NCBI GenBank assembly: GCA_010909165.1
Contig: MU008159.1
Span: 682,001-746,000, forward strand
DNA length: 64,000 bases
Direction of reading: 5' to 3'
Source of the DNA: Anthoceros angustus
Lineage: Eukaryota > Plantae > Anthocerotophyta
Shown here: piece by piece, positions 4,171 through 42,581 of the stretch
Layout: every line of letters starts with the position of its first letter
Position numbering within the stretch: the first letter of the stretch is position 1
The notes under the pieces: model-generated
Database searches by the model: none
Seen by the model: only the letters and a program-made list of their open reading frames with translations
What the model was told of the DNA's origin: nothing
Translations under genes and position numbers: made by a program

Positions 4171-4577
4171 TACGGGAGCGGCTATTTCAGAAAGTAAAAG
4201 TCTCCAAAACTCGCGATTTAAAAAAAAGTATGGAGCGTACTAGACTACCAATGTATGTTGCACCCACCACTTTTCTTGGCTGACGAGGCTTTGTAGAGCA
4301 AGTTGTAAGCTTGCGAGTTGCCAGTGCCCAGTGCCCAGTACCCAGTGCCCCTGCATGTGTGCTCGTGCCGTGCCTGCGTCGTTAATGGCCACGGGATTCT
4401 GGATCCTGCTCCTTCCAAGAAGCCACGGAATAAAACTTTTGTGATCTGATTGCCCATCGTCTTCCCGACAAGTGTGGTTGCATAAGTGCTATTGATGACA
4501 TCCCGGGGCCGGGGCAGCGCTTTGTGAGCCATTCGTTCCGCTAGGAGGTAGGACTTGAGGAGGAGGAGAGCGGGGCC

Positions 4578-5420
4578 ATGGATTGCTTGCGAGCTGGTTG
4601 TGGCATCTGCTGTCAAAGTAGAAGTGTGGTAGAACGGCAGCACGCTCACTGGAAGGAGAGGAGCTCCAGGAGTTGCTTACGTCAAGCCGTTTTCCGGAGG
4701 GCCTCACCTCTGCGGGCCGTATGGCCAGGGAAGGATTGTTCCTTGGGCGCAGGAGCATGGAGAGGGGGAGGTTTTTGCAAGGCAGGTGAAAGCTCAAGGA
4801 CCAGAAATGGGCAGCTGTTTGTGGCTGACCAGCATACTGCCAGTGTCATCTCTGCACAGAGCTTGGAACAGGCAGAGGATTTCACCCACCGGGGGGAGGG
4901 GGAGGACGCGTTGGTGGACGCCCCTTCTGTGACGGTTGAGAAGGTTGGCAAGAACAAGCGACGCATTGCGGCCACGATATCTATCGGAGCCCCTCTGGCG
5001 ACCGTGTGGGGGATTCTCACAGATTACGACAGGCTGTCAGATTTCATCCCCGGCTTGGCTGTCAGCGAGCTGTTGGAGAAGGGGGAAGACAGGGCGTTGA
5101 TCAGGCAGGTTGGGCAGCAGGATTTGGCCTTCGGCATCGTGTTTAAGGCAGAGGCCGTGATGGAGGTCACAGAGCACCCTCTCGAGATACGCAATGGAGC
5201 CCGGAGAGACCTGGATTTTCAGATGGTGAAGGGGGACTTTGAGCTGTTTGCCGGCACTTGGAGTATGGAGGAGGACAGATGTGCAGCACCCACGACTGTG
5301 CTGTCCTACGTAGTGGAAGTGCAGCCTAAGGTGTGGTTGCCTGTAGCTCTCTTGGAGGCAAGATTAAGCAACGATATCAAGCTCAATCTCACATGTATCA
5401 GGGACGCTGCCGTTGCCTGA
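4578..5420 (+). CDS. Polyketide cyclase/dehydrase (START/SRPBCC, Coq10-like) protein, probably plastid-targeted, intronless
   Basis: 280-aa ORF containing RRIAATISIGAPLATVWGILTDYDRLSDFIPGL...DFQMVKGDFELFAGTWSME...LSYVVEVQPKVWLPVALLE, after a Ser/Arg/Cys-rich transit-like N-terminus. Confidence 0.85.
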   Translation: MDCLRAGCGICCQSRSVVERQHAHWKERSSRSCLRQAVFRRASPLRAVWPGKDCSLGAGAWRGGGFCKAGESSRTRNGQLFVADQHTASVISAQSLEQAEDFTHRGEGEDALVDAPSVTVEKVGKNKRRIAATISIGAPLATVWGILTDYDRLSDFIPGLAVSELLEKGEDRALIRQVGQQDLAFGIVFKAEAVMEVTEHPLEIRNGARRDLDFQMVKGDFELFAGTWSMEEDRCAAPTTVLSYVVEVQPKVWLPVALLEARLSNDIKLNLTCIRDAAVA

Positions 5421-6420: not shown

Positions 6421-9400
6421 ATGGTGAAGATGCGAATGACCACCGCCGATGTGGCAGCTGAAGTGTGCTGCCTAAGGAAGCTTATAGGCATGCGTTGTGC
6501 CAACATTTATGACCTGACGCCAAGGGTGAGACAATTTATGGCTGCTTTGCTTGGATGTTCTCGCTGAGGCTGCACAATTCTTTGCAGTTTATAGTGCCTC
6601 ATAAGGTTTGGCTGTGCGACTTTGTGATACCTTAACCCCGTACAGCAATGTTGGGAAACCTGCAGACTTATGTGATGAAGCTCGCCAAGAGCAGTGGGTT
6701 GGCTGAATCAGGGGAGAGTGAGAGAGCATTGGTGTTATTGGAAAGTGGCATCCGTTTGCATACCACAGTGTTTTCTCGGTAAGGATATGTCTCATGTGCA
6801 CATGTTTTCTTGTCCCCGTTTCCTATTCATAACCTCAGGGGTTTTCCCTTTGTTTCGTTGCTTGTTTTGTTGATGGAGTATTAGCCTTTTTGATGCTAGC
6901 TTTCTGCAGAGACAAGAGTTCAACTCCATCTGGATTCACGCTGAAGCTGAGAAAGCATATCCGAACGCGGAGGTTGGAGGATGTGCGACAACTGGGCATT
7001 GATAGAGTACAGTGCTTACATCCCCTAGTTCTTGAAGCATCCGGTGGTTGTGCAACCTGTAATGGTTCTCTGTTTGACGAGAAACCTGCCAACAGTTCCG
7101 GGTTCTTGAATGGTTGGCAGGTTGTGGACTTTCAGTTTGGACTAGGAGATAGTGCTCATCATATCATACTTGAGCTCTATTCTCAGGGCAACGTTCTTCT
7201 TACAGATGGGAACTACAATGTTCTTACCTTACTTCGATCTCACAGGTTAGCCTTTTGGTTCTTGCTGTCTTTCATTTCATTCCCCTTCTTCCTGTGGTTG
7301 CTTAATTCATCCGAATCCTATCTGGGCTTACTCAGGGATGATGACAAAGGCGTGACTATGATGGCACGCCATCGATATCCAATTGATACTTGCCGCCTGT
7401 TTTTGCGAACTTCGTCTGAAAAGATACGGCAAGCCCTTGAGTCAGGCTCTCCTGAGCAGGAAGGTCTTGTGGAGCTTAATGAGCAAGACAATGCTGAAGG
7501 AAATCTGGACAAGCGGGGAAAGAAAGGAGAGGGAAAGGGGGGCCGTGGAACTCTGAAAGCTCTTTTGTCGGAGAGTCTGGGATACGGACCAGCTTTAACT
7601 GAGCATATCATCCTGACTGGAGGGCTGCAAGGGAACATGAACAAAAGCCTTCCTGGTGATTCGTTTGATGCCTTGGTATCTGCAGTGGAGAGGTTTGAGG
7701 ATTGGCTGGAGAATGTAGTCAAGGGATTGATTGTTCCTGAAGGCTACATTTTCATGAAGAAGAAAGATAACACTAGGAAAAAGCAGTCTATTGCAGTTGA
7801 GGAGGATGATGAATTGCAAAAGGTGACCTACTCTGCATGGTGTGATATCGTTGACTCCAAATACTCTTCCTAGCATGAACCTGATGATGTACCTCAGTAG
7901 TCAGAGCATTGTCTGCTTGAGATGGTCCAATTCTCCTGCAAAGGGTTCTTTGGGGGTGCAGTACATTAGCTATGTGTGTCTTGCACCTGTGCCTACTGAC
8001 AGACAACAATCTCTGTATGGCTGTCTATCACAGTTATACGATGAGTTTGCTCCACTTCCTTTGCAACAGCTTGCTGACCGTGAAAGGTCTATGTATGAAA
8101 CCTTTGATGCTGCAATGGATGATTTCTTCAGCAAGATTGAGGGACAACGAGCAGAGCAGCAAAGGCAGTCACAGGAAAATAGTGCTTTCTCAAAGCTGGA
8201 GAAAATCCGAGCTGACCAGGTGTGCATGTCTGTGTTCCGGCTTACCAGATCGTTTTCTTGCACTTCTTTGACCAGTATTATCTCAATGCTTTGTTCTGCA
8301 GTCAAACAGGGTGAAAGCATTGAAGAAAGAGGTGGATCAATCCGTCCGGATGGCTGAGCTTGTTGAATACAATCTAGAAGAGGTTGATGCAGCCATAGCT
8401 GCTGTGAGATCAGCGCTTGCCAGTGGCATGGATTGGAAAGATCTCGCTAGAATGATCAAGGATGAGAAGAAGGCAGGGAATCCTGTGGCAGGGTCAATTC
8501 ACAGTTTGCAGCTGGACAAGAATCAAATCACACTACTGCTGAGTAACAACCTTGATGACATGGATGAAGACGAGAAAACTACGCCTGCAGACAAGGTAGC
8601 TTGTTCTATATCAACTCTGGCAACATTATTTGAAACGCTCTTGTAGACTGAACTAATGTTGTTGTGGTCTTAGGTGGAGGTAGATCTTGCACTTTCTGCA
8701 CATGCAAATGCCCGTAAATGGTTTGAGATGAAAAAGAAGCATGCTGTCAAACAAGAGAAAACTGTGGCTGCACATGAGAAGGCTTTCAAAGCTGCAGAAA
8801 GGAAGACTCAACAGCAGCTTGCACAGGTCATAATCATCTAATGGCAATGTTGCTGTGTTACTCTTTCATTTATGGGCAATGCTAATAGGGCAATCATTTT
8901 GTGTTAGCAGGCGAAGAGTGTTGCTGCAATCTCCCATCTTCGCAAGGTGCATTGGTTCGAGAAGTTCAACTGGTTTGTGAGTAGTGAAAACTATCTGGTT
9001 ATAAGTGGACGTGATGCACAGCAGAATGAATTGGTGGTCAAACGCTACATGAAGAAGGGTGACATGTATGTCGCAGGACCAAATGAATCTATTTGGCATC
9101 TTTAAGTCATTTCTATGTATGAATCTTGCTGCTTTGTTACCATTCAACATCTTGTGCAAACAGTTATGTGCACGCAGAATTACATGGAGCATCAAGTACT
9201 GTTATCAAGAACCACGAGCCCTCTCGATCCATTCCACCGCTTACAATCAATCAAGCAGGATCTTTCACGGTATTCTGCACTTAGCTGTACCCTGTAAATG
9301 GACTCCCCTAGATCTGAGCTCGTCTAGTCTCAGATCCATTCTTATCTCTTGCAAATTCAGTTTCACATCTCTCACCCAGTGTAGCCGTATGCTGCTCCAG

Positions 9401-11437
9401 GTTTGCCGAAGTCAAGCTTGGGACTCAAAGATTGTGACCAGTGCATGGTGGGTCTACGACCATCAAGTTAGTAAGACAGCTCCAACTGGTGAGTATCTCA
9501 CAGTTGGTAGCTTCATGGTGCGAGGAGCAAAGAATTTCCTTCCTCCCCATCCACTGGTCATGGGATTTGGTTTGCTATTTCGGTTTGATGAGAGTTCCAT
9601 CGGTTCACACCTCAATGAACGGAGAATCAGAGGTGAAGCTGAAGGGGAAAACGAGGACAATGAGATTGCAGAGGATGAAGATGGAAGGACAAGTAATCAT
9701 ATGACCACAAGGAAAACTTTGCAAAATGGAGATGAAGCCCTGGTAGTGGATGCTGGGCGTTATTCAGGTGGCCAGGATGAGGGTGGTGAGCTTGATGAGG
9801 AAACTAGTGCTGATGAAGAAGGAACACTGACAGGAGGTGAGAAGTTGAATGTGGAGGTCCTTGATGAGAGACATGAGAGCGAAGAACCAGCACTGGATGA
9901 AGAAACCTCTGCCGTTGAACACGCTGGAGATCTTGGGAGTGACACATCTGAGAAAGAGCTTTCCACTTTAGATGACCTCCTTGATAAAGCCCTGGAGCTT
10001 CGGGCAGTGCCCAAGCCAGCAGGTCATGTAACTAAGTATGTTCTAGATACTCACCAGCCAGCTGAGCCTACACCAGCCGATGTGGACTCAAAGTTTGTGC
10101 AACGAGACAGGCCATATTTGTCTAAGGCAGAAAGAAGGAGATTGAAGAAAACGGGAAAGGTTACTGCAGCGGAAGAAGCTTCAGTGGATACTGAACAAGA
10201 TGACCCTGCAGACCAAGTTGAAGATGAGCAGGATCTTTCTGCCAGTGCCAAAAATGCAAGAGGGTTGGACGGGCAAGGGAAGCCTATTCGTGGCAAAAAG
10301 GGAAAGATGAAGAAAATCAAGGAGAAATACTACGACCAGGATGAGGAAGAACGTCAGCTGAAGATGTCGTTGTTAAAAGTATGCAAATTTTTGTGTGTTT
10401 ACTCTTCCCTTTACTGTTTCTTCTTATTTGCTAGAACTACCATGTTTGTAGTGCTTTCTGGATCTGTCTGAAACTCCTCCTATTGGCAGTCTGTGGGAGG
10501 GAAAGAAGAGACGTCAGTAGCTGGAGGAAAGAAAGGCGGATCAAAGCTTTTGCAGGGAAAACAGCAGCTTGCTGGTATTTTGGGTTCAGTTTAGTGATGT
10601 AACTTCAGGCACGGCAGCTACGTTTTTGCTGTTTTATGGATAGGAGTGCCATTTGTTTCATTTTATGGCAGGTACCATTGTACAAGAGAATTCAAAAATT
10701 TGCTACAAGTGTAAGAAGGCTGGTCATGTAGCTCGAGATTGTCCAACAGAGATCAGCGAAGGGACCCTTGATGTGGTGGAGAAGGAAAGTCTTAAGGCAA
10801 CTGGTAGTAGCATAAGCAGAGGTGACCAAGCAAGTGAATCAAACACCGATGTTGTTCCACAACCTGATGTAGTCACATCTGAAGGTGGAGGCAAGGTGGT
10901 TGAGGGCCTCAGACGGAAAGCACGTGCAAAGGTAGCAGAGGAAGAGATTGCAGCCATTCGAGCAGAAGAAAATATTGTTCAGCTCAGTGAAGAGCAAAGA
11001 TTGAGGTTGACCGAGCTTGACACCTTAACAGGGAACCCTTTACCTGACGACGTACTGCTATATGCTGTGCCTGTTTGTGGACCTTACAGTGCTCTCCAAC
11101 GATACAAATTCCGTGTTAAACTCACTCCTGGGGCCGCAAAGAAAGGAAAAGGTGGTGTCTGCTTCCATGCCAACATCCCTGGTACTTCCTTTGTGTGTAT
11201 GTACATCTCCAGAGCTCATATTCAAGTTTCGTTTGTGCAGGGGCTAAAACTGCCTTGGACGTGTTCAGTCGCATGCCAGAAGCCACTCCACGAGAGAAGG
11301 AATTGATGAAGGCAATGACAGAACCAGAGATGGCTGCAGCTATGATTGGAAATGTGAAAGTAACAGCTCCTGGATTGACGAAAATGAAGCAAAATCAGAA
11401 GAAGGGAAAGAAGGCTTCAAGGAAAGACACAAGTTAA
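6421..11437 (+). CDS. NEMF: Nuclear export mediator factor / ribosome quality-control subunit (NEMF/Rqc2) with CCHC knuckle, multi-exon
   Basis: Begins [35 protein letters not shown] motifs: [70 protein letters not shown]. Also [14 protein letters not shown] and the C-terminal [27 protein letters not shown]. Stop at 11435-11437. Confidence 0.93.
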
Positions 11438-19825: not shown

Positions 19826-21010
19826 TTATTCCGTGAGCGTGGCGGAACTTTCCAATAGCATCACATCAGGCTTTGATACGTTTACAGCAACATCAAACCG
19901 CGGCAGGAAAGTTCCAACGCTAAAGCTATTCAAAAACCCACGCGGCTCCGCATCCTGGGGCAGGCGTATCAAGTGGCTCGAGTCATACATCACAAGACCA
20001 GCTGGATAATGTGGCGTACTAGAAACGACACCAACATACAACCTCCTCAAATCCCCTCCGCATGCGGCATGAAAGAACAGTGATCCAGAGCGACCAGTGA
20101 TCTGGGGCTGCGTAAATATGGTGACATCGAATCGCCCACAAATGCTCTCACCCAGTGGACTTGGCCGTAGGTGACTGTCGATAATGAGGAGCCACACCAA
20201 TGTCCAAGGGAGACCTGCCCTAGGGTTTGAGATCCTCGAAAAGACCATCTCTAACCGATTGTGTTCCACAACGTAGCCCACAATTCGAACGTCTCCGGAT
20301 CCGGTGTGGAACGGGAAGTAAACCATACCTTTGGATACTGCGACGCCTGCATCGCCAATCAGACTGTCGCCTTCAGGTCCGGACCAATTACCAGCTTCCC
20401 GCCTCCACCTCGAGGCACCGGAATCGTACACGTGAACCGTAAAGCACCTGTTATATCCGAACAACGGGAACTGGAAGCAAAGGATTTTGAAGCCCCCAGG
20501 CTTGGTATTCGCATCCACCATAACATGCACGTAGTGGGCATCGCGTGCACAGAGTTCCCGGTCGGCAACCACATGCTGCCACCTCTGGAGCAAAGGATTG
20601 CCCACCCAGTAGTGCCAATACCGGTTTCCAACGGCATCAACAAGACTCTCCCGCAGCAGCACCAGCCCGGACTTTCCTGCAGAACCTCCGCACACCTCGA
20701 GCTGGTTCACTCCTGCTGTGGGAACATGGAAGCCAAACCACCTGGCAGAAACCGGGTCGTAACCACGCAACACGGCCTCAAACGGGCCGCGGCCCGACGC
20801 GTCGAAACACCTCGTACGGCAAAGGAACAACCACGGTTGCCCTTTGTCGGGCCCGACAGCTTCATGAGACGTGATAATCCGGTTCCACGTCTTGCACACC
20901 GATCGCACCTGTGCCAGGCTCACAGTCGGTAACCGACGTAAAATATCTGCCAGCAGATCGTCCGGTAGGGCGTCCAGCCCGCATCTCCTTGTCCCGCCTG
21001 CAGCCTCCAT
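19826..21010 (-). CDS. F-box protein with C-terminal beta-propeller-like (Kelch/FBA-type) region, intronless
   Basis: F-box LDALPDDLLADILRRLPTVSLAQVRSVCKTWNRII, then YDPVSARWF, WVGNPLLQRW and VHVYDSGASRWR. First ATG at 21010; the ORF track extends further on a non-ATG start. Confidence 0.85.
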   Translation of the reverse strand: MEAAGGTRRCGLDALPDDLLADILRRLPTVSLAQVRSVCKTWNRIITSHEAVGPDKGQPWLFLCRTRCFDASGRGPFEAVLRGYDPVSARWFGFHVPTAGVNQLEVCGGSAGKSGLVLLRESLVDAVGNRYWHYWVGNPLLQRWQHVVADRELCARDAHYVHVMVDANTKPGGFKILCFQFPLFGYNRCFTVHVYDSGASRWRREAGNWSGPEGDSLIGDAGVAVSKGMVYFPFHTGSGDVRIVGYVVEHNRLEMVFSRISNPRAGLPWTLVWLLIIDSHLRPSPLGESICGRFDVTIFTQPQITGRSGSLFFHAACGGDLRRLYVGVVSSTPHYPAGLVMYDSSHLIRLPQDAEPRGFLNSFSVGTFLPRFDVAVNVSKPDVMLLESSATLTE

Positions 21011-21351
21011 GCTTTCGACTTCTCTACGCGAGCTCGTCTCCTCGTCTCCTTGGCGGACCTCGGGTGAAGAAGAAAAGAGTGAGAGAGACCAAGCTGAATT
21101 CACCATTTCTACTATCCGAAGTGAGGAGTTTCCATGTTAGAGAGCATTTCTGATCCATCTTCTATGGCTTTCCCTTTTAGTTGTGAGGAGAGGCCATCCA
21201 TGACTGCTTCAACTCAAGTATAGAAGCTGTGGTTTCAAGAATTGCAGCATCCGAATGAGGCAGGCCTCGACAGTATTTAAGAAAAGGCACTAGTACGAGG
21301 ATGGAACACTGCCTCAGGTTTCTTTAATTTCTGGGGGTCTAAGTAGTTAGG

Positions 21352-23090
21352 ATGGGAGCGTGTGCCAGTCGGGATGGTGCTGAATCTGCTGGACAGAGCA
21401 GTGGCTTGGGATGTCTTTCTCGTCCTTCTGGGAGAAAGACACGTTTGCATTCGAACGCCGAAGAATCGATACCGGCAGCTCATTCGGCAAACGCAGTGGA
21501 CTTGAATGGTGAGTGGCACCAGGGGCAGGACGAAATTGCCCGGCAGCATGAGGAGGAAATATCAGCTATCAAGTGCATTTTTTGTGAAACAACTCTTCGT
21601 TCTTCCAGTGCCGAGAGTCAGAGACTTCAGAAATTGGAGTCCGTGTCCCTAAAATGGCGTAGGAATCTTGAAGGGAGGGACGTGGATATGTCCTGGTGCT
21701 TGGAGGAGAGAGACTTTGTGCAGGTGTACAATCTTGTTTCTGCTGTTTGCTTGGCGTTGGAGTGTAAGAAGTTGCTGAAGCAATCGTGTTCCCGGATTTT
21801 GGAATGCGGACATCGCTGTGGAGGAGTTCGAGCAGAACGTGCTTGCCTTCCCTGTCTAGAGGTTGATCGTGCTAACCTAAATGACGCCTGTAGACATTTC
21901 TTTCCGTTCGTGAGAATGCTATAGCTTTTCGAACGACTGATTTGACACCCTTTCCTACATTCCGCAGGATGGCTGTCGATCAGGTCCATGTGCTGGTCAG
22001 ACGGTCTTCACATCCGGGGACGAGCTGTGTGCTATATGTATGGTGGATCCTATTAAACGAGCACCTGCCATACTGCTGACCTGTGGGCATGTGGTGCACG
22101 CGCACTGTGCAAAGAGGAAGATTGAGGCGGGATTTCCAGGCCCCGAAATCAGTTTCACTTTCCTCGAGTGTCCACAATGTGCCCAGGTCATGCAACATCC
22201 AATTTTAGAGCTCTATGCGATGAAGCATGAGCTGATGAGAGACCTGGTAGGAAACTAATTCTATTCGTCCAGAGGGTGTGCGGTTTCTTGGTGGAGCAAT
22301 ACCTACCTCTTCATCTCCTTCAGAGAAGAGATCCTGAAGCTTGAGACATTTCGCTGTGCAGGTTAGGGAAAGGGTAATAGAGCGGCTCAAGGAGGATCAA
22401 ATGGAAGAAGAGCGCAGGCTCAAGCGCAAGGCTTCTTCTACTGAAAGGGCGGGCCGTCTCGCCCGGCTGTGGACTAGCGCGAGGGAATTCGCGGCAAGGC
22501 CCTATTCAGGGGGGCCTTCAAAGTCGAGGGTAGAGTCGAAAGTAGAAGTAGCCGAGGAGGTGAAAGTAACCGAGGAGGTGGTCATAGCTGCCATGAAGAA
22601 GTATCAGTATTACTTGTGCTTTAACTGTAAGGAGCCATATTTTGGTGGTATTCACGACTGCCGAGCGGGAAATGGAGGGTGCGTGATGGGCAAAAGACGT
22701 CAGTTTCTCTTCTTGATTGATTTCAGATTTCTGGACTCGTTTGCAACTTACATCAACAATGCTTGCTTGTGCAGGGAACACGCTTGTGATCCGCGCAAGC
22801 TCATGTGTGGCGGCTGTTCTGCCGCCGGGGGTTTTTTCGCAAGATGTAAGGTGGCCGGGCATGGCACTAAGTACCTCGAATACAAGTGCAAATATTGCTG
22901 CAGCAAGGCTGTTTTTGTTTGTTTTGGAGAACACACTTGTGCCTATCACCATGAAAGGTTGCTCGGGCCGAGCAATATAATCCCTGGCGAGTGTGGAGGC
23001 CCTGGGTATTGCCGTTTGGGGGTTGAGCATCCCCCAAATGGCCAAGAGTTCTGCCTTGGCTGTTCTCTTTGTCGTATGCGAGGACAATAA
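21352..23090 (+). CDS. MYCBP2-like: Stand-alone MYCBP2/Highwire/RPM-1-type RING-Cys-relay E3 ubiquitin ligase, 4 exons, ~473 aa
   Basis: Exons 21352-21861, 21968-22246, 22362-22678 and 22775-23090, all GT-AG and in frame. Contains CSRILECGHRCGGV..CLPCL, RING-H2 CAIC..CGHVVHAHC..FLECPQC, and the tandem-cysteine domain YQYYLCFNCKEPYFGGIHDC...DPRKLMCGGC...LEYKCKYCCSKAVFVCFG...HPPNGQEFCLGCSLCR. Confidence 0.88.
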
Positions 23091-23597
23091 CGAACCATTT
23101 GTTTTTGCGGAAAACAATTCAAATTAAATGTTTACAGCAAATAGCTGTAAGAGTTGATTACAAAAAGAACCAAATTAGGCTTCCATATCTGTTGAGAAGG
23201 AAGGCTCGCTGCCCCCTCGCGATCACGACCTGAGCCAGTTTAATCAATTTACCTTCTATTTTCTGTAGAGGCCGCAAGAGAACGTCACCCTGAACTCTTA
23301 TGAGGAGCTCCCGCTTGGTAGCCTCCGATAGGAGACCACTAATGTCACACATTGGTAAATGGAGACAAGTGCAAGGATTATCAACCGCCGCTGTGCCAAG
23401 GATATGGCTTTTCTGGTAGCTTGGCTGAATGTGAGGGAATCCGCCATGGGAACATCACCCTACGGAGCTGTTTGCACCAGTTTGGTCAAAACTTGAGTGA
23501 ACCTATCCAGTCCCCAATGAGAGTCATGCTGAACGGCAGCATCTCAGCGCCAGGAATAAGCGTCCACAGCAATAGTGAGTCAGACAACCAAAATGTG

Positions 23598-23682
23598 GAG
23601 CAGCCTCATCGTATGACATCCCATCAAGCTCGTCCATAAGAGCAGCCTCATCGTATGACATCCCATCAAGCTCGTCCATAAG
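23598..23682. repeat. Perfect 42-bp tandem duplication
   Basis: gagcagcctcatcgtatgacatcccatcaagctcgtccataa at 23598 and 23640. Confidence 0.95.
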
Positions 23683-24462
23683 GCTTCGCAGCATACTTGT
23701 CATGAACATAAATAATAAATTATTAATGATAAATAGAAATAGAAAAATATAGGATAAGTATGAGACAGGACTGGAGTTTGTAGGAAGTAATTAACGGCAT
23801 GCCTGACACAAATCTGGGAAGACAGTATATAAATGAGAAGCCGCCCATATGGAGGGAGCTATGTGAATTCAAAGTAGATGTTACCTTGTTTCATGGGTAT
23901 AGTATATATGTAGAGCTAGATTTGTCGAGTATATATGTAGAGGGGTAAAGTTTTCAAGGTCTTGCTGGATTTGAATCATTAGGAGAAAGATAACTGTGTC
24001 TATATCTAAAAGAGAGTACTATGAATTTGGAGATGAAAGGCACGTCACACCCCTCATCATTCGATAGAGGCTATGGTTGGTAGTGCCGACATTAGGGTCA
24101 AAGAGTCATTCACGCAAGTTCCATTAGAGGTTTTTGATATTTGCATCCTTGTTTAGTGAGGATTTGTTTGACTGGCAAAATGTGCTACAGAGAGAGAGCC
24201 ATGGGAGGGAGCGATTGCGAGAGGATGTAAGAGGATGTGCGAAGAAGTAGGAGGATGCTGGAGGGAGCGATGGCACATGCACGAGCATGAAAGTAATATT
24301 GTCGGGACCAAAATATGAGGGATCAATCCTAGGATATGGGTGCATGTGGATTGAAGTGAAAGTTTGGAAGTTCGGAAACGCTTGGGATACAATGTGGCCA
24401 TGCTCTTTCCACTTCCTACGGTCTATTTTTCCTCATCTTCATCATCATGTCTTCCATGCGAA

Positions 24463-39445: not shown

Positions 39446-42400
39446 TTACGGGTGCTGGTGGTGGATGTTGGCAGCAGCAACGGAAGGCGAGTCTCCTCCG
39501 GCCGCGGAGTCGCTCTCGTCGGAGAAGGAGTCCTCGTTGTAAGTGGAGGTGTCGGTGTAGAGGTCCCGGCTGGGAATCTCCTCGATCTGCCTCACCACGT
39601 CGCTCATCTTGGGCCTGGCCTCGGGGGAGTTCTCGACGCAGTTCATGCCGATCTGCAGCAGGCTCACCATCTCCTCCTCGATGTCGTTGTACGCCATGAG
39701 GTCCATGTCGAACACCTCGGCCGTCCACTCCTCCCGCACCACGGAGCGCGTCCACCGCGGGAGGTCGATCCCGGGTCCGCCACCCCGGCCGGAGCCAGAG
39801 ATCCCCGCCAGCGCCAGCGCCGGCACGGGCGCCGGCGCCGGCGCCAGCCACCACGGACTGCGCCGGGAGGCGGCCCGTGAGCAGCTCCAGGATGAGCACG
39901 CCGAAGCTGAAGACGTCCGCCTTGGGCGTGATCCGCTTGGTTTGGCTGTACTCGGGGGCGCGGTATCCCGCCAGGCGCGCCGCCGCCATCGCCCCGGTCA
40001 TGAGCGGCGCCAGCCCGTAGTCGCTGATCCGCGGCTCGTTGTTGGCGTCCAGCAGAATGTTGGAGGACTTGATGTTGCCGTGCGGGATCCGCTGCGACTC
40101 GCACTCCCGGTGCAAGTACTCCAACCCCCTGGCCACTCCCAGCGCGATGCGCAGCCGCGTCGTCCACCCGAGCGGCTTCCGCTTCAGCCCCGTCCTCGCC
40201 GCCCCTGCATGCATGCAAGTCCCACTCCCCGTGCTCAATTCTTACACGATGCAAGCTTGAGCGCGCACAACCGTTACAATTCAAGTCCGGCAACAAACAC
40301 AGGACGTCTCCAACTCCAACAAGAAACACAAAGAGGTGTCCAATTCCAAGGGAAGCAACAAGGAGACAGATTCCAAGGGAAGCAAGCGGCTCGACACAAG
40401 GAGACGGACAAATATGAGGAGGGGTGTTGTTACCGTGGAGAAGGTTAAAGACGCTCCCGTTGGGCTGGTACTCTGCGACGAGGAACTTCTCCTCGCGCGC
40501 GTAGTAGTAGGCCTTGAGGGGGACGAGATTGGGGTGGCGGAGCTTGCCGAGGAGCTCCATCTGCTGCTCGAACTCCTTGCGGCCGGAGTCGCGGAGGTCG
40601 CGGAGGCGCTTCACGGCGACCTCGGCGCCGCCGTCCAGGACGGCCTTGTACGCGGTGCCGAAGCTGCCCTTGCCGAGCATCTCGGCGGAGGCGCGCAGGA
40701 GGTCCTCCAGGTCGAAGGAGTGCTCGTGGCCGGGGAAGAAGGCGAGGCGGCCGCGCCGCCGCCCTCGCCCCGGTCATGAGCGGCGCCAGTAGTCGCTGAT
40801 CCGCGGCTCGTTGTTGGCGTCCAGCAGAATGTTGGAGGACTTGATGTTGCCGTGCGGGATCCGCTGCGACTCGCACTCCCGGTGCAAGTACTCCAACCCC
40901 TGGCCACTCCCAGCGCGATGCGCAGCCGCGTCGTCCACCCGAGCGGCTTCCGCTTCAGCCCCGTCCTCGCCGCCCCTGCATGCAAGTCCACTCCCGTGCT
41001 CAATTCTTACACGATGCAAGCTTGAGCGCGCACAACCGTTACAATTCAAGTCCGGCAACAAACACAGGACGTCTCCAACTCCAACAAGAAACACAAAGAG
41101 GTGTCCAATTCCAAGGAAGCAACAAGGAGACAGATTCCAAGGAAGCAAGCGGCTCGACACAAGGAGACGGACAAATATGAGGAGGTGTTGTTACCGTGGA
41201 GAAGGTTAAAGACGCTCCCGTTGGGCTGGTACTCTGCGACGAACTTCTCCTCGCGCGCGTAGTAGTAGGCCTTGAGGGGGACGAGATTGGGGTGGCGGAG
41301 CTTGCCGAGGAGCTCCATCTGCTGCTCGAACTCCTTGCGGCCGGAGTCGCGGAGGTCGCGGAGGCGCTTCACGGCGACCTCGGCGCCGCCGTCCAGGACG
41401 GCCTTGTACGCGGTGCCGAAGCTGCCCTTGCCGAGCATCTCGGCGGAGGCGCGCAGGAGGTCCTCCAGGTCGAAGGAGTGCTCGTGGCCGGGGAAGAAGG
41501 CGAGGCGGCCGCGCCCGCCGCCCTCCTCAGCCTGCGCCTGCACCTGCGCCTGCGCCTGCGCCTGCGCCGACAGGGGCCCGGACTCGAGGTAGCTCTGGCT
41601 CATGTGGGGGGACGCCTTGTTGGCGTAGCTCTTGCTCACCACGATCGACACTCCCCCTTTCTTCCCCGCGCCGGGCTTGCCTTCCTGCTCCCTGGCCGCC
41701 TTCTTGTACTTCTTGTTGTAGTAGAGGTAGAACCAGAAGGTGAGGAGGAAGAGGAAGAAGATGTCGCCGATGACGATGGCCGCCACCGCCAGCGGCTTCA
41801 GGCCCTTGTTCTTCTTCGGGCTCGGGGCCGGGGCGGCCACCGGGCACGCGGGGAGGACCGGGGCGCCGCACAGCTGGGAGTCTCCCAGGAAGGCGGATTT
41901 GCCGAACTTGGAGAGCAGCCCCGGGGGGACCGTCCCTCCCAGGTCCCGGTTGTAGGAGACGTTGAAGTCGAGCAGGGAGGCGGCGTTGAGGCCCGGGAGC
42001 TGGCCCTGGAACTGGTTCTGCTCCAGCCGGAGGACGGTGAGCGGGAGGACGGCCAGCGCGCCGGAGATGGAGCCGGAGAGCTGGTTTCCCGGGAGAGTTA
42101 GGTTCTGGAGCTGCGAGAGCTTGGAAAGGTCCGGGAGGGAGCCGGTGAAGTTGTTTCCCGCGAGAGACAGGTTCTGGAGGCGGATGAGATGGCCCAGGTC
42201 GGGTGGGAGGGGGCCCCGGAGCTGCGTCCCCTCCATGCTCAGCGCCTGCAGGTTCGTCATGTTCCCCAGCGTCCCCGCCGGGAAGGTGCCCCCCAGAGTG
42301 ATGTCGCGCAGGTGGATGGCGTACACCAGGTTGTCCCCGTCGCAGCTCACTCCGATCGGGCCGTGGACGGTGGAGATGCAGGGGTCGCTCCCGTCCCAGT

Positions 42401-42581
42401 CCGAGAGCTGGTTGGACGGGTCCGCGGCTTTCTTGAACGCCAACATCGCCTTCCCTGCTGCCGGGTCCCGAGCGCGCGCGCTGGGCCAGTTGGAGCTGCC
42501 CAGGAGCGCGAGCATCAGGAAGGCGGCATATCCGAGTTCCTGGACTGATCCTCTGGTGCTGTGGGATCTGGTTCTGGCCAT
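39446..42581 (-). CDS. LRR-III atypical leucine-rich-repeat receptor-like kinase (RLK902/PRK-like), with an internal ~770-bp duplication and frameshifts as assembled
   Basis: Signal peptide, LRRNT (W.GSDPC), about 5 LRRs, [92 protein letters not shown] and [23 protein letters not shown] at 39446-39448. Confidence 0.9.

What the first reader, a model, noticed from the sequence alone, without database searches (positions are those of the whole stretch)
21352..23090. Miniature MYCBP2/Highwire-type RING-Cys-relay E3 ligase in a land plant
Seen: a ~473-aa spliced ORF consisting almost entirely of the pre-RING zinc module, RING-H2 and tandem-cysteine domain. Established: in animals this module ends the ~4,600-aa MYCBP2/PHR proteins and transfers ubiquitin through two catalytic cysteines (human C4520, C4572) to threonine hydroxyls. 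Both are present: FGGIHDC (TGC 22659-22661) and AVFVCFG (TGT 22920-22922). Removing the 96-nt in-frame intron makes the C...DPR.L.CG.C spacing identical to the human sequence as I recall it, which independently supports the gene model. Inference: an uncharacterised non-lysine (ester-linked) ubiquitination enzyme in a seed-free plant, stripped of the RCC1/PHR/DOC domains. I know of no such enzyme characterised in angiosperms.
Basis: partly seen in the sequence, partly recalled or inferred. Interest (0 to 1): 0.85.

Follow-up and report, generated by a model that had tools for sequence, protein, structure and literature searches.

The report
Shortened plant Highwire-like ubiquitin ligase gene
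This land plant has an intact-looking gene for a small relative of the animal nerve-cell enzyme MYCBP2/Highwire, which passes ubiquitin along two cysteines; the family is old, widespread and already labelled in databases though untested outside animals, and this copy is shortened and has a uniquely altered final reaction site.

Summary
A four-exon, 473-aa ORF (21352-23090, +) encodes a pre-RING zinc region, a RING-H2 and a tandem-cysteine (TC) domain. The TC domain matches human MYCBP2 structures 5O6C/6T7F (E 2e-19). Both relay cysteines (codons 22659-61 and 22920-22) and catalytic His4583 align exactly, with the human loop spacing.

This is not a stripped-down MYCBP2. It belongs to an old family of small RCR proteins found in green algae, Chara, mosses, lycophytes, ferns, amoebae and ciliates. 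Databases already label some members "highwire-like", "MYCBP2" or "RCR-type E3 ubiquitin transferase". I found no biochemical study of them and no seed-plant member.

The scan noted a paralogue on another piece of this genome (s1-257976). The window copy is a fast-evolving paralogue that lacks the family's N-terminal ~265 aa. Its three introns sit at the same places and phases as in Selaginella.

Its downstream active site is uniquely altered among 174 family members: the triad Glu is Lys, the pocket Phe is Thr, one zinc Cys is His, and one residue is deleted. Threonine esterification therefore cannot be assumed. No RNA evidence was obtainable.

The parts
21352..23090 (+). Whole coding region of the 473-aa RCR-type ligase gene (start codon to stop codon)
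   Evidence: Spliced ORF without stops. An in-frame TAA lies 12 nt upstream of the ATG. tblastn with fern and lycophyte homologues covers all four exons.
21352..21861 (+). Exon 1 (aa 1-170): unique N-terminus beginning MGACAS, then the pre-RING zinc region ending CLPCLE
   Evidence: The donor GAG|GTTGAT lies at the same place and phase as Selaginella intron 1.
21352..21369 (+). MGACAS: Gly2, Cys4 and Ser6, an N-myristoylation/S-acylation-type motif (inferred only)
   Evidence: Read from the translation. Interpreted from general knowledge of the MGxxxS/T consensus; not tested.
21574..21976 (+). Pre-RING zinc region (aa 75-173, spanning intron 1), conserved from animals to plants: C-x2-C ... CGHxCGGxxxExxCLPCLxxxC
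   Evidence: Alignment with plant, amoebozoan and animal members.
21862..21967 (+). Intron 1 (106 nt, phase 0, GT-AG)
   Evidence: Homologous position in Selaginella LOC9631788. GC 0.44 against 0.51-0.53 in the exons.
21968..22246 (+). Exon 2 (aa 171-263) with the RING-H2 and the start of the linker helix
   Evidence: Pfam zf-RING_5 E 6.4e-7, above its cut-off; alignment.
22028..22180 (+). RING-H2 zinc ligands: C191, C194 ... C210-x-H212-x2-H215-x2-C218 ... C238, C241
22247..22361 (+). Intron 2 (115 nt, phase 0, GT-AG)
   Evidence: Same position and phase as Selaginella intron 2.
22362..22678 (+). Exon 3 (aa 264-369): linker helix, copy-specific insertion, first part of the TC domain with the upstream Cys
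22401..22574 (+). Copy-specific charged insertion (about 47-58 aa) between the linker helix and the TC domain
   Evidence: Absent from all 18 aligned homologues. GC 0.59, and no in-frame GT-AG pair with a pyrimidine tract, so it is probably coding. Partly low pLDDT in the model, below 50 at query 48-54.
22590..23087 (+). Tandem-cysteine (TC) domain, aa 340-473, interrupted by intron 3
   Evidence: phmmer against 5O6C/6T7F E 1.8e-19. Foldseek finds only 6T7F/5O6C, E 5e-7.
22659..22661 (+). TGC, Cys363 = upstream relay cysteine (human C4520)
   Evidence: Cys in 168 of 174 family members.
22679..22774 (+). Intron 3 (96 nt, phase 2, GT-AG, open in frame) inside the mediator loop
   Evidence: Selaginella has a phase-2 intron in the same loop.
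22775..23090 (+). Exon 4 (aa 369-473 plus stop): rest of the TC domain with the downstream site
22797..22799 (+). AAG, Lys377 at the position of the triad Glu4534 (DPRK instead of DPRE)
   Evidence: The position is E in 107 and D in 48 of 174 members, and no Lys appears among the six commonest residues listed.
22920..22922 (+). TGT, Cys418 = downstream (substrate-transfer) cysteine (human C4572)
   Evidence: Cys in 172 of 174 members.
22935..22937 (+). ACT, Thr423 at the position of human F4578; a one-residue deletion lies just before it, between E421 and H422
   Evidence: The position is F157/Y10/M7 in 174 members, never Thr. In the same alignment only the window protein lacks a residue in the column between E421 and H422.
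22947..22952 (+). CAC CAT: His427 (replaces zinc ligand C4582) and His428 (= catalytic His4583)
   Evidence: C4582 position is C172/H2. H4583 position is His in 174 of 174.

Best explanation
This is a real, structurally intact nuclear gene. It encodes a lineage-specific, 5'-truncated and fast-evolving paralogue of the green-lineage 'Highwire-like' small RING-Cys-relay (RCR) ubiquitin ligases.

Shown here:
- It descends from a four-exon ancestor like the Selaginella gene, and it lost the first ~265 codons inside exon 1.
- It keeps the pre-RING zinc region, the RING-H2, every TC-domain zinc ligand but one (a Cys replaced by His), both relay cysteines and the catalytic His.

Inferred mechanism:
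- The RING binds a ubiquitin-charged E2.
- Ubiquitin is transthiolated to Cys363 in the flexible mediator loop.
- It is then relayed to Cys418.
- It is discharged to a substrate nucleophile with help from His428.

The acid of the Cys-His-Glu triad is Lys377. The neighbouring invariant aromatic residue is Thr423, and the loop after Cys418 is one residue shorter. The last step (acceptor choice or efficiency) is therefore probably different from threonine-selective MYCBP2 and cannot be predicted.

The new N-terminus MGACAS suggests myristoyl/palmitoyl anchoring to a membrane. This is inferred and untested.
For: - Homology: PDB phmmer E 1.8e-19 with residue-level alignment of C4520, C4572 and H4583. 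Foldseek finds only 6T7F/5O6C as significant matches.
- Gene model: there are no stops and all splice sites are GT-AG. The junctions restore gap-free alignment. The three introns match Selaginella LOC9631788 in position and phase.
- Family placement: the gene lies inside the land-plant clade (support 85/98) with an end branch of 1.37, against 0.05-0.67 for other land plants.
- Truncation: tblastn of three full-length plant homologues on all 64 kb matches only their residues from about 245-310 onward.
- Constraint: 43 of the 45 alignable universally invariant columns are retained, although identity to the nearest relative is only about 51%.
- Altered site: residue census of 174 TC domains.
- Role of the residues: the Cys-His-Glu triad and a hydrophobic threonine pocket are described in PMC9527308, and an essential His4583 in PMC7615817.
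Against: - No transcript evidence. The only run offered held next to none of the sampled words, and no contig was laid on the stretch.
- No orthologue of the short form was found in 1.84 billion representatives or in metagenome contigs. The best hit is 52% identical. Conservation of this form is therefore unproven.
- The changes unique to this copy cluster at the downstream active site.
- With the same alignment, AlphaFold2 models that segment poorly. For the window protein, pLDDT is below 50 at query 181-191 and the mean is 67.8. The fern member scores 89.2. The window query also carried 32 intron-encoded residues and the insertion.
- The lipidation motif is a pattern match only.
Confidence: 0.6

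Rival explanations
1. Decaying or catalytically dead duplicate. On this reading, a partial gene copy lost its 5' part and is drifting, so it is a young pseudogene or a non-enzymatic zinc protein. The intact ORF would reflect recent silencing or retained structural use only.
For: - It is truncated relative to every named green-lineage member.
- Its end branch is 2-3 times longer than those of other land-plant members.
- Its unique replacements lie at positions that are otherwise invariant or nearly so, beside the downstream Cys: Glu to Lys, Phe to Thr, Cys to His and a one-residue deletion.
- AlphaFold2 confidence is low there, unlike the fern control.
- No RNA evidence was found.
Against: - The 473 codons span four exons with no stop or frameshift and with canonical splice sites.
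- All RING and pre-RING ligands, 15 of 16 TC ligands, both relay cysteines and the His are kept despite about 50% overall divergence.
- The zinc-ligand change is Cys to His, which can still bind zinc.
- There is a proper ATG with an upstream in-frame stop, and a new N-terminus.
Confidence: 0.25
2. One reading: a faithful miniature MYCBP2 that esterifies threonine or serine hydroxyls in the same way as the human enzyme.
For: Both cysteines, His4583, F4573 (Phe419) and the human-like mediator-loop length are present.
Against: - The triad Glu4534 is Lys. No such case appears among the residues listed for 174 relatives.
- The F4578 position is Thr (F/Y/M in all the others).
- The loop after the catalytic Cys is one residue shorter.
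- The stretch aligned to human DDFQR, which would hold F4586, is gapped and dissimilar.
- The reviews attribute hydroxyl selectivity to exactly this triad and a hydrophobic pocket.
Confidence: 0.15
3. Incomplete gene model: the true gene has further upstream exons encoding the family's N-terminal RING1/IBR-like part, so the protein is not short.
For: All named plant relatives have that part. No RNA data are available to fix the 5' end.
Against: - tblastn finds no trace of residues 1-264 of the relatives anywhere in the 64-kb window; the best stray hit has E 0.085 and lies on the other strand.
- In Selaginella that part lies in the same exon as the pre-RING region. Here the homologous exon opens with unrelated sequence, an ATG and an in-frame stop 12 nt upstream.
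- An F-box gene on the opposite strand starts 245 bp upstream.
Confidence: 0.05

Closest known systems
Human MYCBP2 (PAM/Highwire/RPM-1, PHR proteins) RCR module, PDB 5O6C and 6T7F
   Same: - The order is the same: pre-RING zinc region, RING-H2, linker helix, TC domain.
- The upstream and downstream relay cysteines, catalytic His4583, F4573 and the mediator-loop length all align.
- 15 of the 16 TC zinc ligands are identical.
   Different: - The protein has 473 aa rather than about 4,640, with no RCC1-like, PHR, DOC/APC10, Myc-binding or FBXO45-binding regions.
- Glu4534 is Lys, F4578 is Thr and C4582 is His, and one residue is deleted after the catalytic Cys.
- It has a charged insertion of about 50 aa before the TC domain.
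- It carries an N-terminal lipidation-type motif.
Green-lineage small 'Highwire-like' RCR proteins. Examples: Physcomitrium XP_024395653.1, Ceratodon KC19_2G009400, Selaginella LOC9631788, Diphasiastrum O6H91_13G085400, Ceratopteris KP509_12G090100, Chara CBR_g39123. All are uncharacterised.
   Same: - The window protein falls in the same clade.
- Its three introns match Selaginella's in position and phase.
- The C-terminal 370 aa have the same architecture, and the C-terminal ending is the same (...CLGCSxCRxxxQ).
   Different: - Those proteins have 620-690 aa, including an N-terminal RING1/IBR-like region of about 265 aa that is missing here.
- They keep an acidic residue at the Glu4534 position (Gln in Diphasiastrum), Phe at F4578 and Cys at C4582.
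- They lack the insertion.
Protist small RCR proteins. Examples: Dictyostelium DDB_G0284853, called 'mycBP2/Highwire-like' in PMC6743453; Polysphondylium and Cavenderia entries named 'RCR-type E3 ubiquitin transferase' in UniRef; also ciliates, Diplonema, Pelomyxa and Palpitomonas.
   Same: The same RING + TC core with both cysteines and the His. They are small to medium-sized proteins without PHR domains.
   Different: They belong to different clades and have different N-terminal parts (IBR, or APC10 in Palpitomonas). None shows the window copy's active-site changes.

Membership tests
RING-Cys-relay (RCR) E3 module (MYCBP2 type) | RING domain directly upstream of the TC domain | tested here: met
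   Pfam zf-RING_5 at 29.7 bits, above the 27.9 cut-off. The C3H2C3 ligands align with MYCBP2 and its relatives.
RING-Cys-relay (RCR) E3 module (MYCBP2 type) | Tandem-cysteine zinc domain homologous to MYCBP2 residues ~4500-4640 | tested here: met
   phmmer against 5O6C/6T7F E 1.8e-19. Foldseek finds only 6T7F/5O6C, E 5e-7, prob 1.0. TM is only 0.39 because of the insertions. The fern relative reaches TM 0.77.
RING-Cys-relay (RCR) E3 module (MYCBP2 type) | Upstream relay cysteine (C4520) in a mediator loop | tested here: met
   Cys363 aligns to chain position 143, which is C4520. Ten residues separate it from DPR, as in human.
RING-Cys-relay (RCR) E3 module (MYCBP2 type) | Downstream catalytic cysteine (C4572) | tested here: met
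   Cys418 in AVFVCFG aligns to chain position 195, which is C4572.
RING-Cys-relay (RCR) E3 module (MYCBP2 type) | Catalytic histidine (H4583) | tested here: met
   His428. This position is His in 174 of 174 relatives. Its role is described in PMC7615817.
RING-Cys-relay (RCR) E3 module (MYCBP2 type) | Acidic triad residue (E4534) | tested here: not met
   Lys377 (DPRK). Relatives have E107/D48/H5/Q3 and a few others. The triad is described in PMC9527308.
RING-Cys-relay (RCR) E3 module (MYCBP2 type) | Hydrophobic (Phe) pocket for the threonine methyl group. The assignment to F4573, F4578 and F4586 is from my memory of Pao et al. 2018, which was not readable here. | tested here: not met
   F4573 is kept as Phe419. 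F4578 is Thr423, whereas relatives have F/Y/M only. The F4586 stretch is gapped.
RING-Cys-relay (RCR) E3 module (MYCBP2 type) | Full set of TC-domain zinc ligands | tested here: inconclusive
   All are kept except C4582, which is His427. His could still bind zinc, and 2 of 174 relatives also have His there. No coordinates were available to check the geometry.
RING-Cys-relay (RCR) E3 module (MYCBP2 type) | E2-to-Cys-to-Cys ubiquitin relay and ester-forming activity | not testable with these tools
   This needs biochemistry.
PHR proteins (MYCBP2/Highwire/RPM-1 orthologues) | Giant protein with RCC1-like, PHR, DOC/APC10 and FBXO45-binding regions | tested here: not met
   The protein has 473 aa. 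Exon 1 has no Pfam hit. In the tree it groups with plant small RCRs, not with the animal giants.
Green-lineage small 'Highwire-like' RCR family | Groups with the land-plant members and shares their intron positions | tested here: met
   The clade has 85/98 support. The three introns have the same places and phases as in Selaginella.
Green-lineage small 'Highwire-like' RCR family | N-terminal ~265-aa RING1/IBR-like region | tested here: not met
   It is absent from the protein and from the whole 64-kb window.

The most novel reading that the evidence does not exclude
The window copy may be a neofunctionalised, membrane-anchored RCR ligase whose last step has changed chemistry. A Lys sits where the triad Glu should be, beside the Cys418 thioester, and a polar Thr replaces the pocket Phe. 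The enzyme could therefore discharge ubiquitin to a different class of acceptor. Alternatively it could transfer ubiquitin onto its own Lys377 in a single-turnover, self-marking reaction. Either would be a natural experiment on what sets acceptor choice in relay ligases.
Probability: 0.1. Interest if true: 0.7.

Novelty: new variant of a known kind. Interest (0 to 1): 0.4.

Why it matters
RCR ligases are known experimentally from a single giant animal protein. They are the textbook case of ubiquitin attached to hydroxyl groups rather than to lysine.

Small RCR proteins exist throughout the green lineage up to ferns, and I saw none in seed plants. That gives compact, tractable enzymes for two purposes: asking whether ester-linked ubiquitination occurs in plants, and dissecting the relay mechanism. 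Physcomitrium has a member and is genetically tractable.

This particular copy adds a natural variant with the relay intact but the acceptor site rewritten. It would be informative if active. It may equally be a duplicate on its way out.

The family as such is visible in databases, so the discovery value of this locus alone is moderate.

Tried and rejected
- RNA evidence: the look-up of sequencing runs listed one run holding about 1% of the sampled words, and read laying laid nothing. Expression is therefore unknown.
- Locating the genome: the neighbouring F-box protein is not on record. An LRR-kinase ORF is about 40% identical to lycophyte, liverwort, fern and seed-plant proteins alike. The species was not identified beyond 'land plant of a poorly sampled lineage'.
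- Orthologue of the short form: none was found in the exhaustive representative search (best 52% identity) or in metagenome contigs (at most 50%).
- The full 473-aa protein could not be given to the search, fold or cluster tools, because a spliced product has no reference. The TC region was therefore searched and folded with intron 3 read through (32 extra residues). This lowers the model quality.
- ESM Atlas feature search gave only weak ciliate clusters with scores of 0.88 or less.
- Exact exon mapping of the Ceratodon gene failed because the locus does not translate to the stored protein. Selaginella was used instead.
- A hidden intron inside the charged insertion was considered and rejected. 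GC is 0.59, and no in-frame acceptor has a pyrimidine tract.
- The alternative donor at 21910 (489 aa) was rejected by homology.
- Pao et al. 2018 and Mabbitt et al. 2020 were not readable. The residue roles come from reviews and, for the three Phe residues, from memory.
- Literature searches for plant or moss RCR/Highwire studies found none.
Full report
**Observation.**
Reading 20800-23700 and listing ORFs shows three open stretches on the + strand. Enumerating GT/AG pairs gives two open splice combinations. The other (donor 21910, 489 aa) breaks a junction that is otherwise identical to fern homologues (CLPCLE|DGCR).

The splice sites are GAG|GTTGAT, CTG|GTAGGA and AGG|GTGCGT, each with a ...GCAG acceptor. 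Introns are lower in GC (0.43-0.47) than exons (0.51-0.53). An in-frame TAA lies 12 nt before the ATG.

**Homology to MYCBP2.**
Exon 2 is a RING (Pfam zf-RING_5, 29.7 bits, cut-off 27.9). Pfam has no model that hits the C-terminal domain.

The translation of 22362-23087 (intron 3 read through) was run with phmmer against all PDB sequences. Only the two MYCBP2 RCR structures, 6T7F and 5O6C, scored significantly (E 1.8e-19). In 5O6C, chain position plus 4377 gives human numbering. FGGIHDC aligns to FGGEARC (chain position 143 = C4520). AVFVCFG aligns to AVFFCFG (position 195 = C4572). The His of CAYHH aligns to H4583.

The upstream Cys and the DPR motif are separated by 10 residues in both proteins, but only after the 96-nt intron is removed.

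An AlphaFold2 model of this stretch finds only 6T7F and 5O6C in the PDB by Foldseek (E 5e-7, prob 1.0). The cysteines are placed as relay cysteines, not as zinc ligands. The separate zinc ligands are all accounted for.

**What family it belongs to.**
An exhaustive HMMER scan of 1.84 billion cluster representatives found 670 clusters at E<=1e-3 and 163 at E<=1e-10. A minority are 3,000-4,700-aa animal giants. Most are 450-1,100-aa proteins with the TC domain at the very C-terminus.

Named green-lineage members are:
- Ferns: Pteridium, Psilotum, Adiantum and Ceratopteris.
- Mosses: Ceratodon, Physcomitrium and Sphagnum.
- Lycophytes: Selaginella and Diphasiastrum.
- The charophyte Chara braunii.
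- Green algae: Scenedesmus, Tetraselmis and Cymbomonas.

Outside plants the family occurs in dictyostelids, Pelomyxa, ciliates, Diplonema and Palpitomonas.

Several members already carry labels:
- 'E3 ubiquitin-protein ligase highwire-like isoform X1' for Physcomitrium XP_024395653.1.
- 'RCR-type E3 ubiquitin transferase' for Polysphondylium and Cavenderia in UniRef.
- 'E3 ubiquitin-protein ligase MYCBP2' in JGI metagenome annotation.

A Dictyostelium member was called 'mycBP2/Highwire-like' in passing in PMC6743453. I found no paper that studies any non-animal member. I saw no seed-plant member in any search. That is suggestive, not proof, because only the best 150 representatives were listed and the word-based searches are capped. 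I confirmed the family-level statements independently, but I could not see that paralogue.

**Position and history of this copy.**
A maximum-likelihood tree (26 rows, 382 columns) puts the window protein inside the land-plant clade (85/98), with Cymbomonas outside. Its end branch is 1.37, against 0.05-0.67 for the other land-plant rows.

The plant archetype has 620-690 aa, and its first ~265 aa form a RING1/IBR-like region. tblastn of three such proteins on the whole window matches only their residues from about 245-310 onward, in the three expected blocks. The window protein's first ~55-70 residues are unrelated.

I solved the Selaginella gene structure exactly. It has four exons, with introns after CLPCLE (phase 0), before the [IV]-[KR]-x-R-x-I-x-R-L-K helix (phase 0) and inside the mediator loop (phase 2). 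The window gene has introns at the same three places and phases. Its exon 1 has 170 codons instead of 429. The copy therefore arose by DNA-level duplication with loss of the 5' part of exon 1, not by retroposition.

No closer relative of the short form exists in the protein collection or in metagenome contigs.

**Conservation and what is altered.**
In an alignment with 20 relatives from plants to animals, 46 columns are invariant in all the others. The window protein keeps 43. One of the three losses lies in the deleted N-terminal part. The other two are F4578->Thr423 and C4582->His427.

A census over 174 distinct TC domains gives these counts:

| Position (human numbering) | Relatives | Window protein |
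|---|---|---|
| Upstream Cys (C4520) | Cys 168/174 | Cys363 |
| Downstream Cys (C4572) | Cys 172/174 | Cys418 |
| H4583 | His 174/174 | His428 |
| E4534 | E107, D48, H5, Q3, T2, S2 | Lys377 |
| F4578 | F157, Y10, M7 | Thr423 |
| C4582 | C172, H2 | His427 |
| Residue between E421 and H422 | present in the aligned relatives | deleted |
| Pro of CPL | P130 | Arg449 |

According to reviews, the downstream site of MYCBP2 uses a Cys-His-Glu triad and a hydrophobic pocket that holds the threonine methyl group (PMC9527308). His4583 is described as essential (PMC7615817). The relay part therefore looks intact, while the acceptor site is rewritten in a way not seen elsewhere in the family.

These changes belong to this copy, not to plant RCRs in general.

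With the same 53-row alignment, AlphaFold2 models the fern member at mean pLDDT 89.2 and pTM 0.82, with TM 0.77 to 5O6C. The window stretch reaches only 67.8 and 0.57, with pLDDT below 50 around Cys418. Part of this drop is due to the intron-encoded 32 residues and the insertion, but those do not cover the low-confidence segment around the downstream site.

**Other features.**
A charged insertion (22401-22574, with the internal repeat VEVAEEVKVTEEV) separates the linker helix from the TC domain. It has high GC and no credible splice sites, so it is probably coding.

The protein begins MGACAS. This fits the N-myristoylation pattern with a nearby Cys for S-acylation (sequence). The interpretation rests on general knowledge and was not tested.

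**Mechanism.**
Most likely (about 0.6) the gene makes a short, possibly membrane-tethered ligase:
- It binds E2~Ub through its RING.
- It takes ubiquitin on Cys363.
- It relays ubiquitin to Cys418.
- It discharges ubiquitin with His428.

Its acceptor preference or efficiency differs from that of MYCBP2. The homology, residue identities and gene structure are shown here. Every catalytic step is inferred.

The main rival (about 0.25) is a duplicate that is losing function. The truncation, the long branch, the site-specific damage and the lack of RNA evidence favour it. The intact ORF and the retention of almost all universally invariant residues, despite about 50% overall divergence, argue against long neutral drift. 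A missing-upstream-exon artefact gets about 0.05.

**Novelty and verdict.**
The kind (RCR ligase) is known. The small non-animal family is visible and labelled in databases but unstudied. This locus is a derived variant of that family. Interest is moderate (0.4). It would rise if the copy proves to be expressed and active with a changed acceptor chemistry.

Noticed in passing
window 19826-21106 (-): An intronless 426-aa F-box protein gene (Pfam F-box E 6e-11) lies head-to-head with the RCR gene, with start codons 245 bp apart. Animal MYCBP2 works with the F-box protein FBXO45. Plants have hundreds of F-box genes, so this is probably coincidence. The protein is not on record in the public collection.
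   Followed up: partly
P0001 residues 1-265; P0004 1-310; P0021, P0172, P0221, P0223, P0224, P0227: The usual non-animal small RCR proteins carry a RING1-like and IBR-like region in front of the RCR module (Pfam IBR hits in several). This amounts to an RBR-type front half joined to a relay-type back half, and it appears unstudied. Its PYHLGxTC motif seems to be conserved in the animal giants too.
   Followed up: partly
P0007/P0154 (Diphasiastrum complanatum): This lycophyte's copies have Gln at the triad Glu position and Asn at an otherwise invariant zinc-binding His next to the downstream Cys. This is a second, independent case of a modified downstream site in plants.
   Followed up: no
window about 23590-23685 (+): A direct tandem duplication of about 43 bp (…agcagcctcatcgtatgacatcccatcaagctcgtccataa… twice) lies about 500 bp downstream of the gene.
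   Followed up: no
window 9059-10471 (+) and 41046-42581 (-): Other plant-type genes lie in the window: an ORF with an NFACT RNA-binding domain (E 1e-12) and an LRR receptor-like kinase ORF. The kinase ORF is about 40% identical to lycophyte, liverwort, fern and seed-plant proteins alike, so the source lineage is poorly represented in the protein collections.
   Followed up: partly
P0002 and P0005 clusters (metagenome contigs): Moss-like RCR gene fragments turn up in environmental metagenomes as prokaryote-style ORF calls that read from an intron into the last exon. This shows plant DNA in those samples, and an intron just upstream of the DPR-equivalent motif there too.
   Followed up: no
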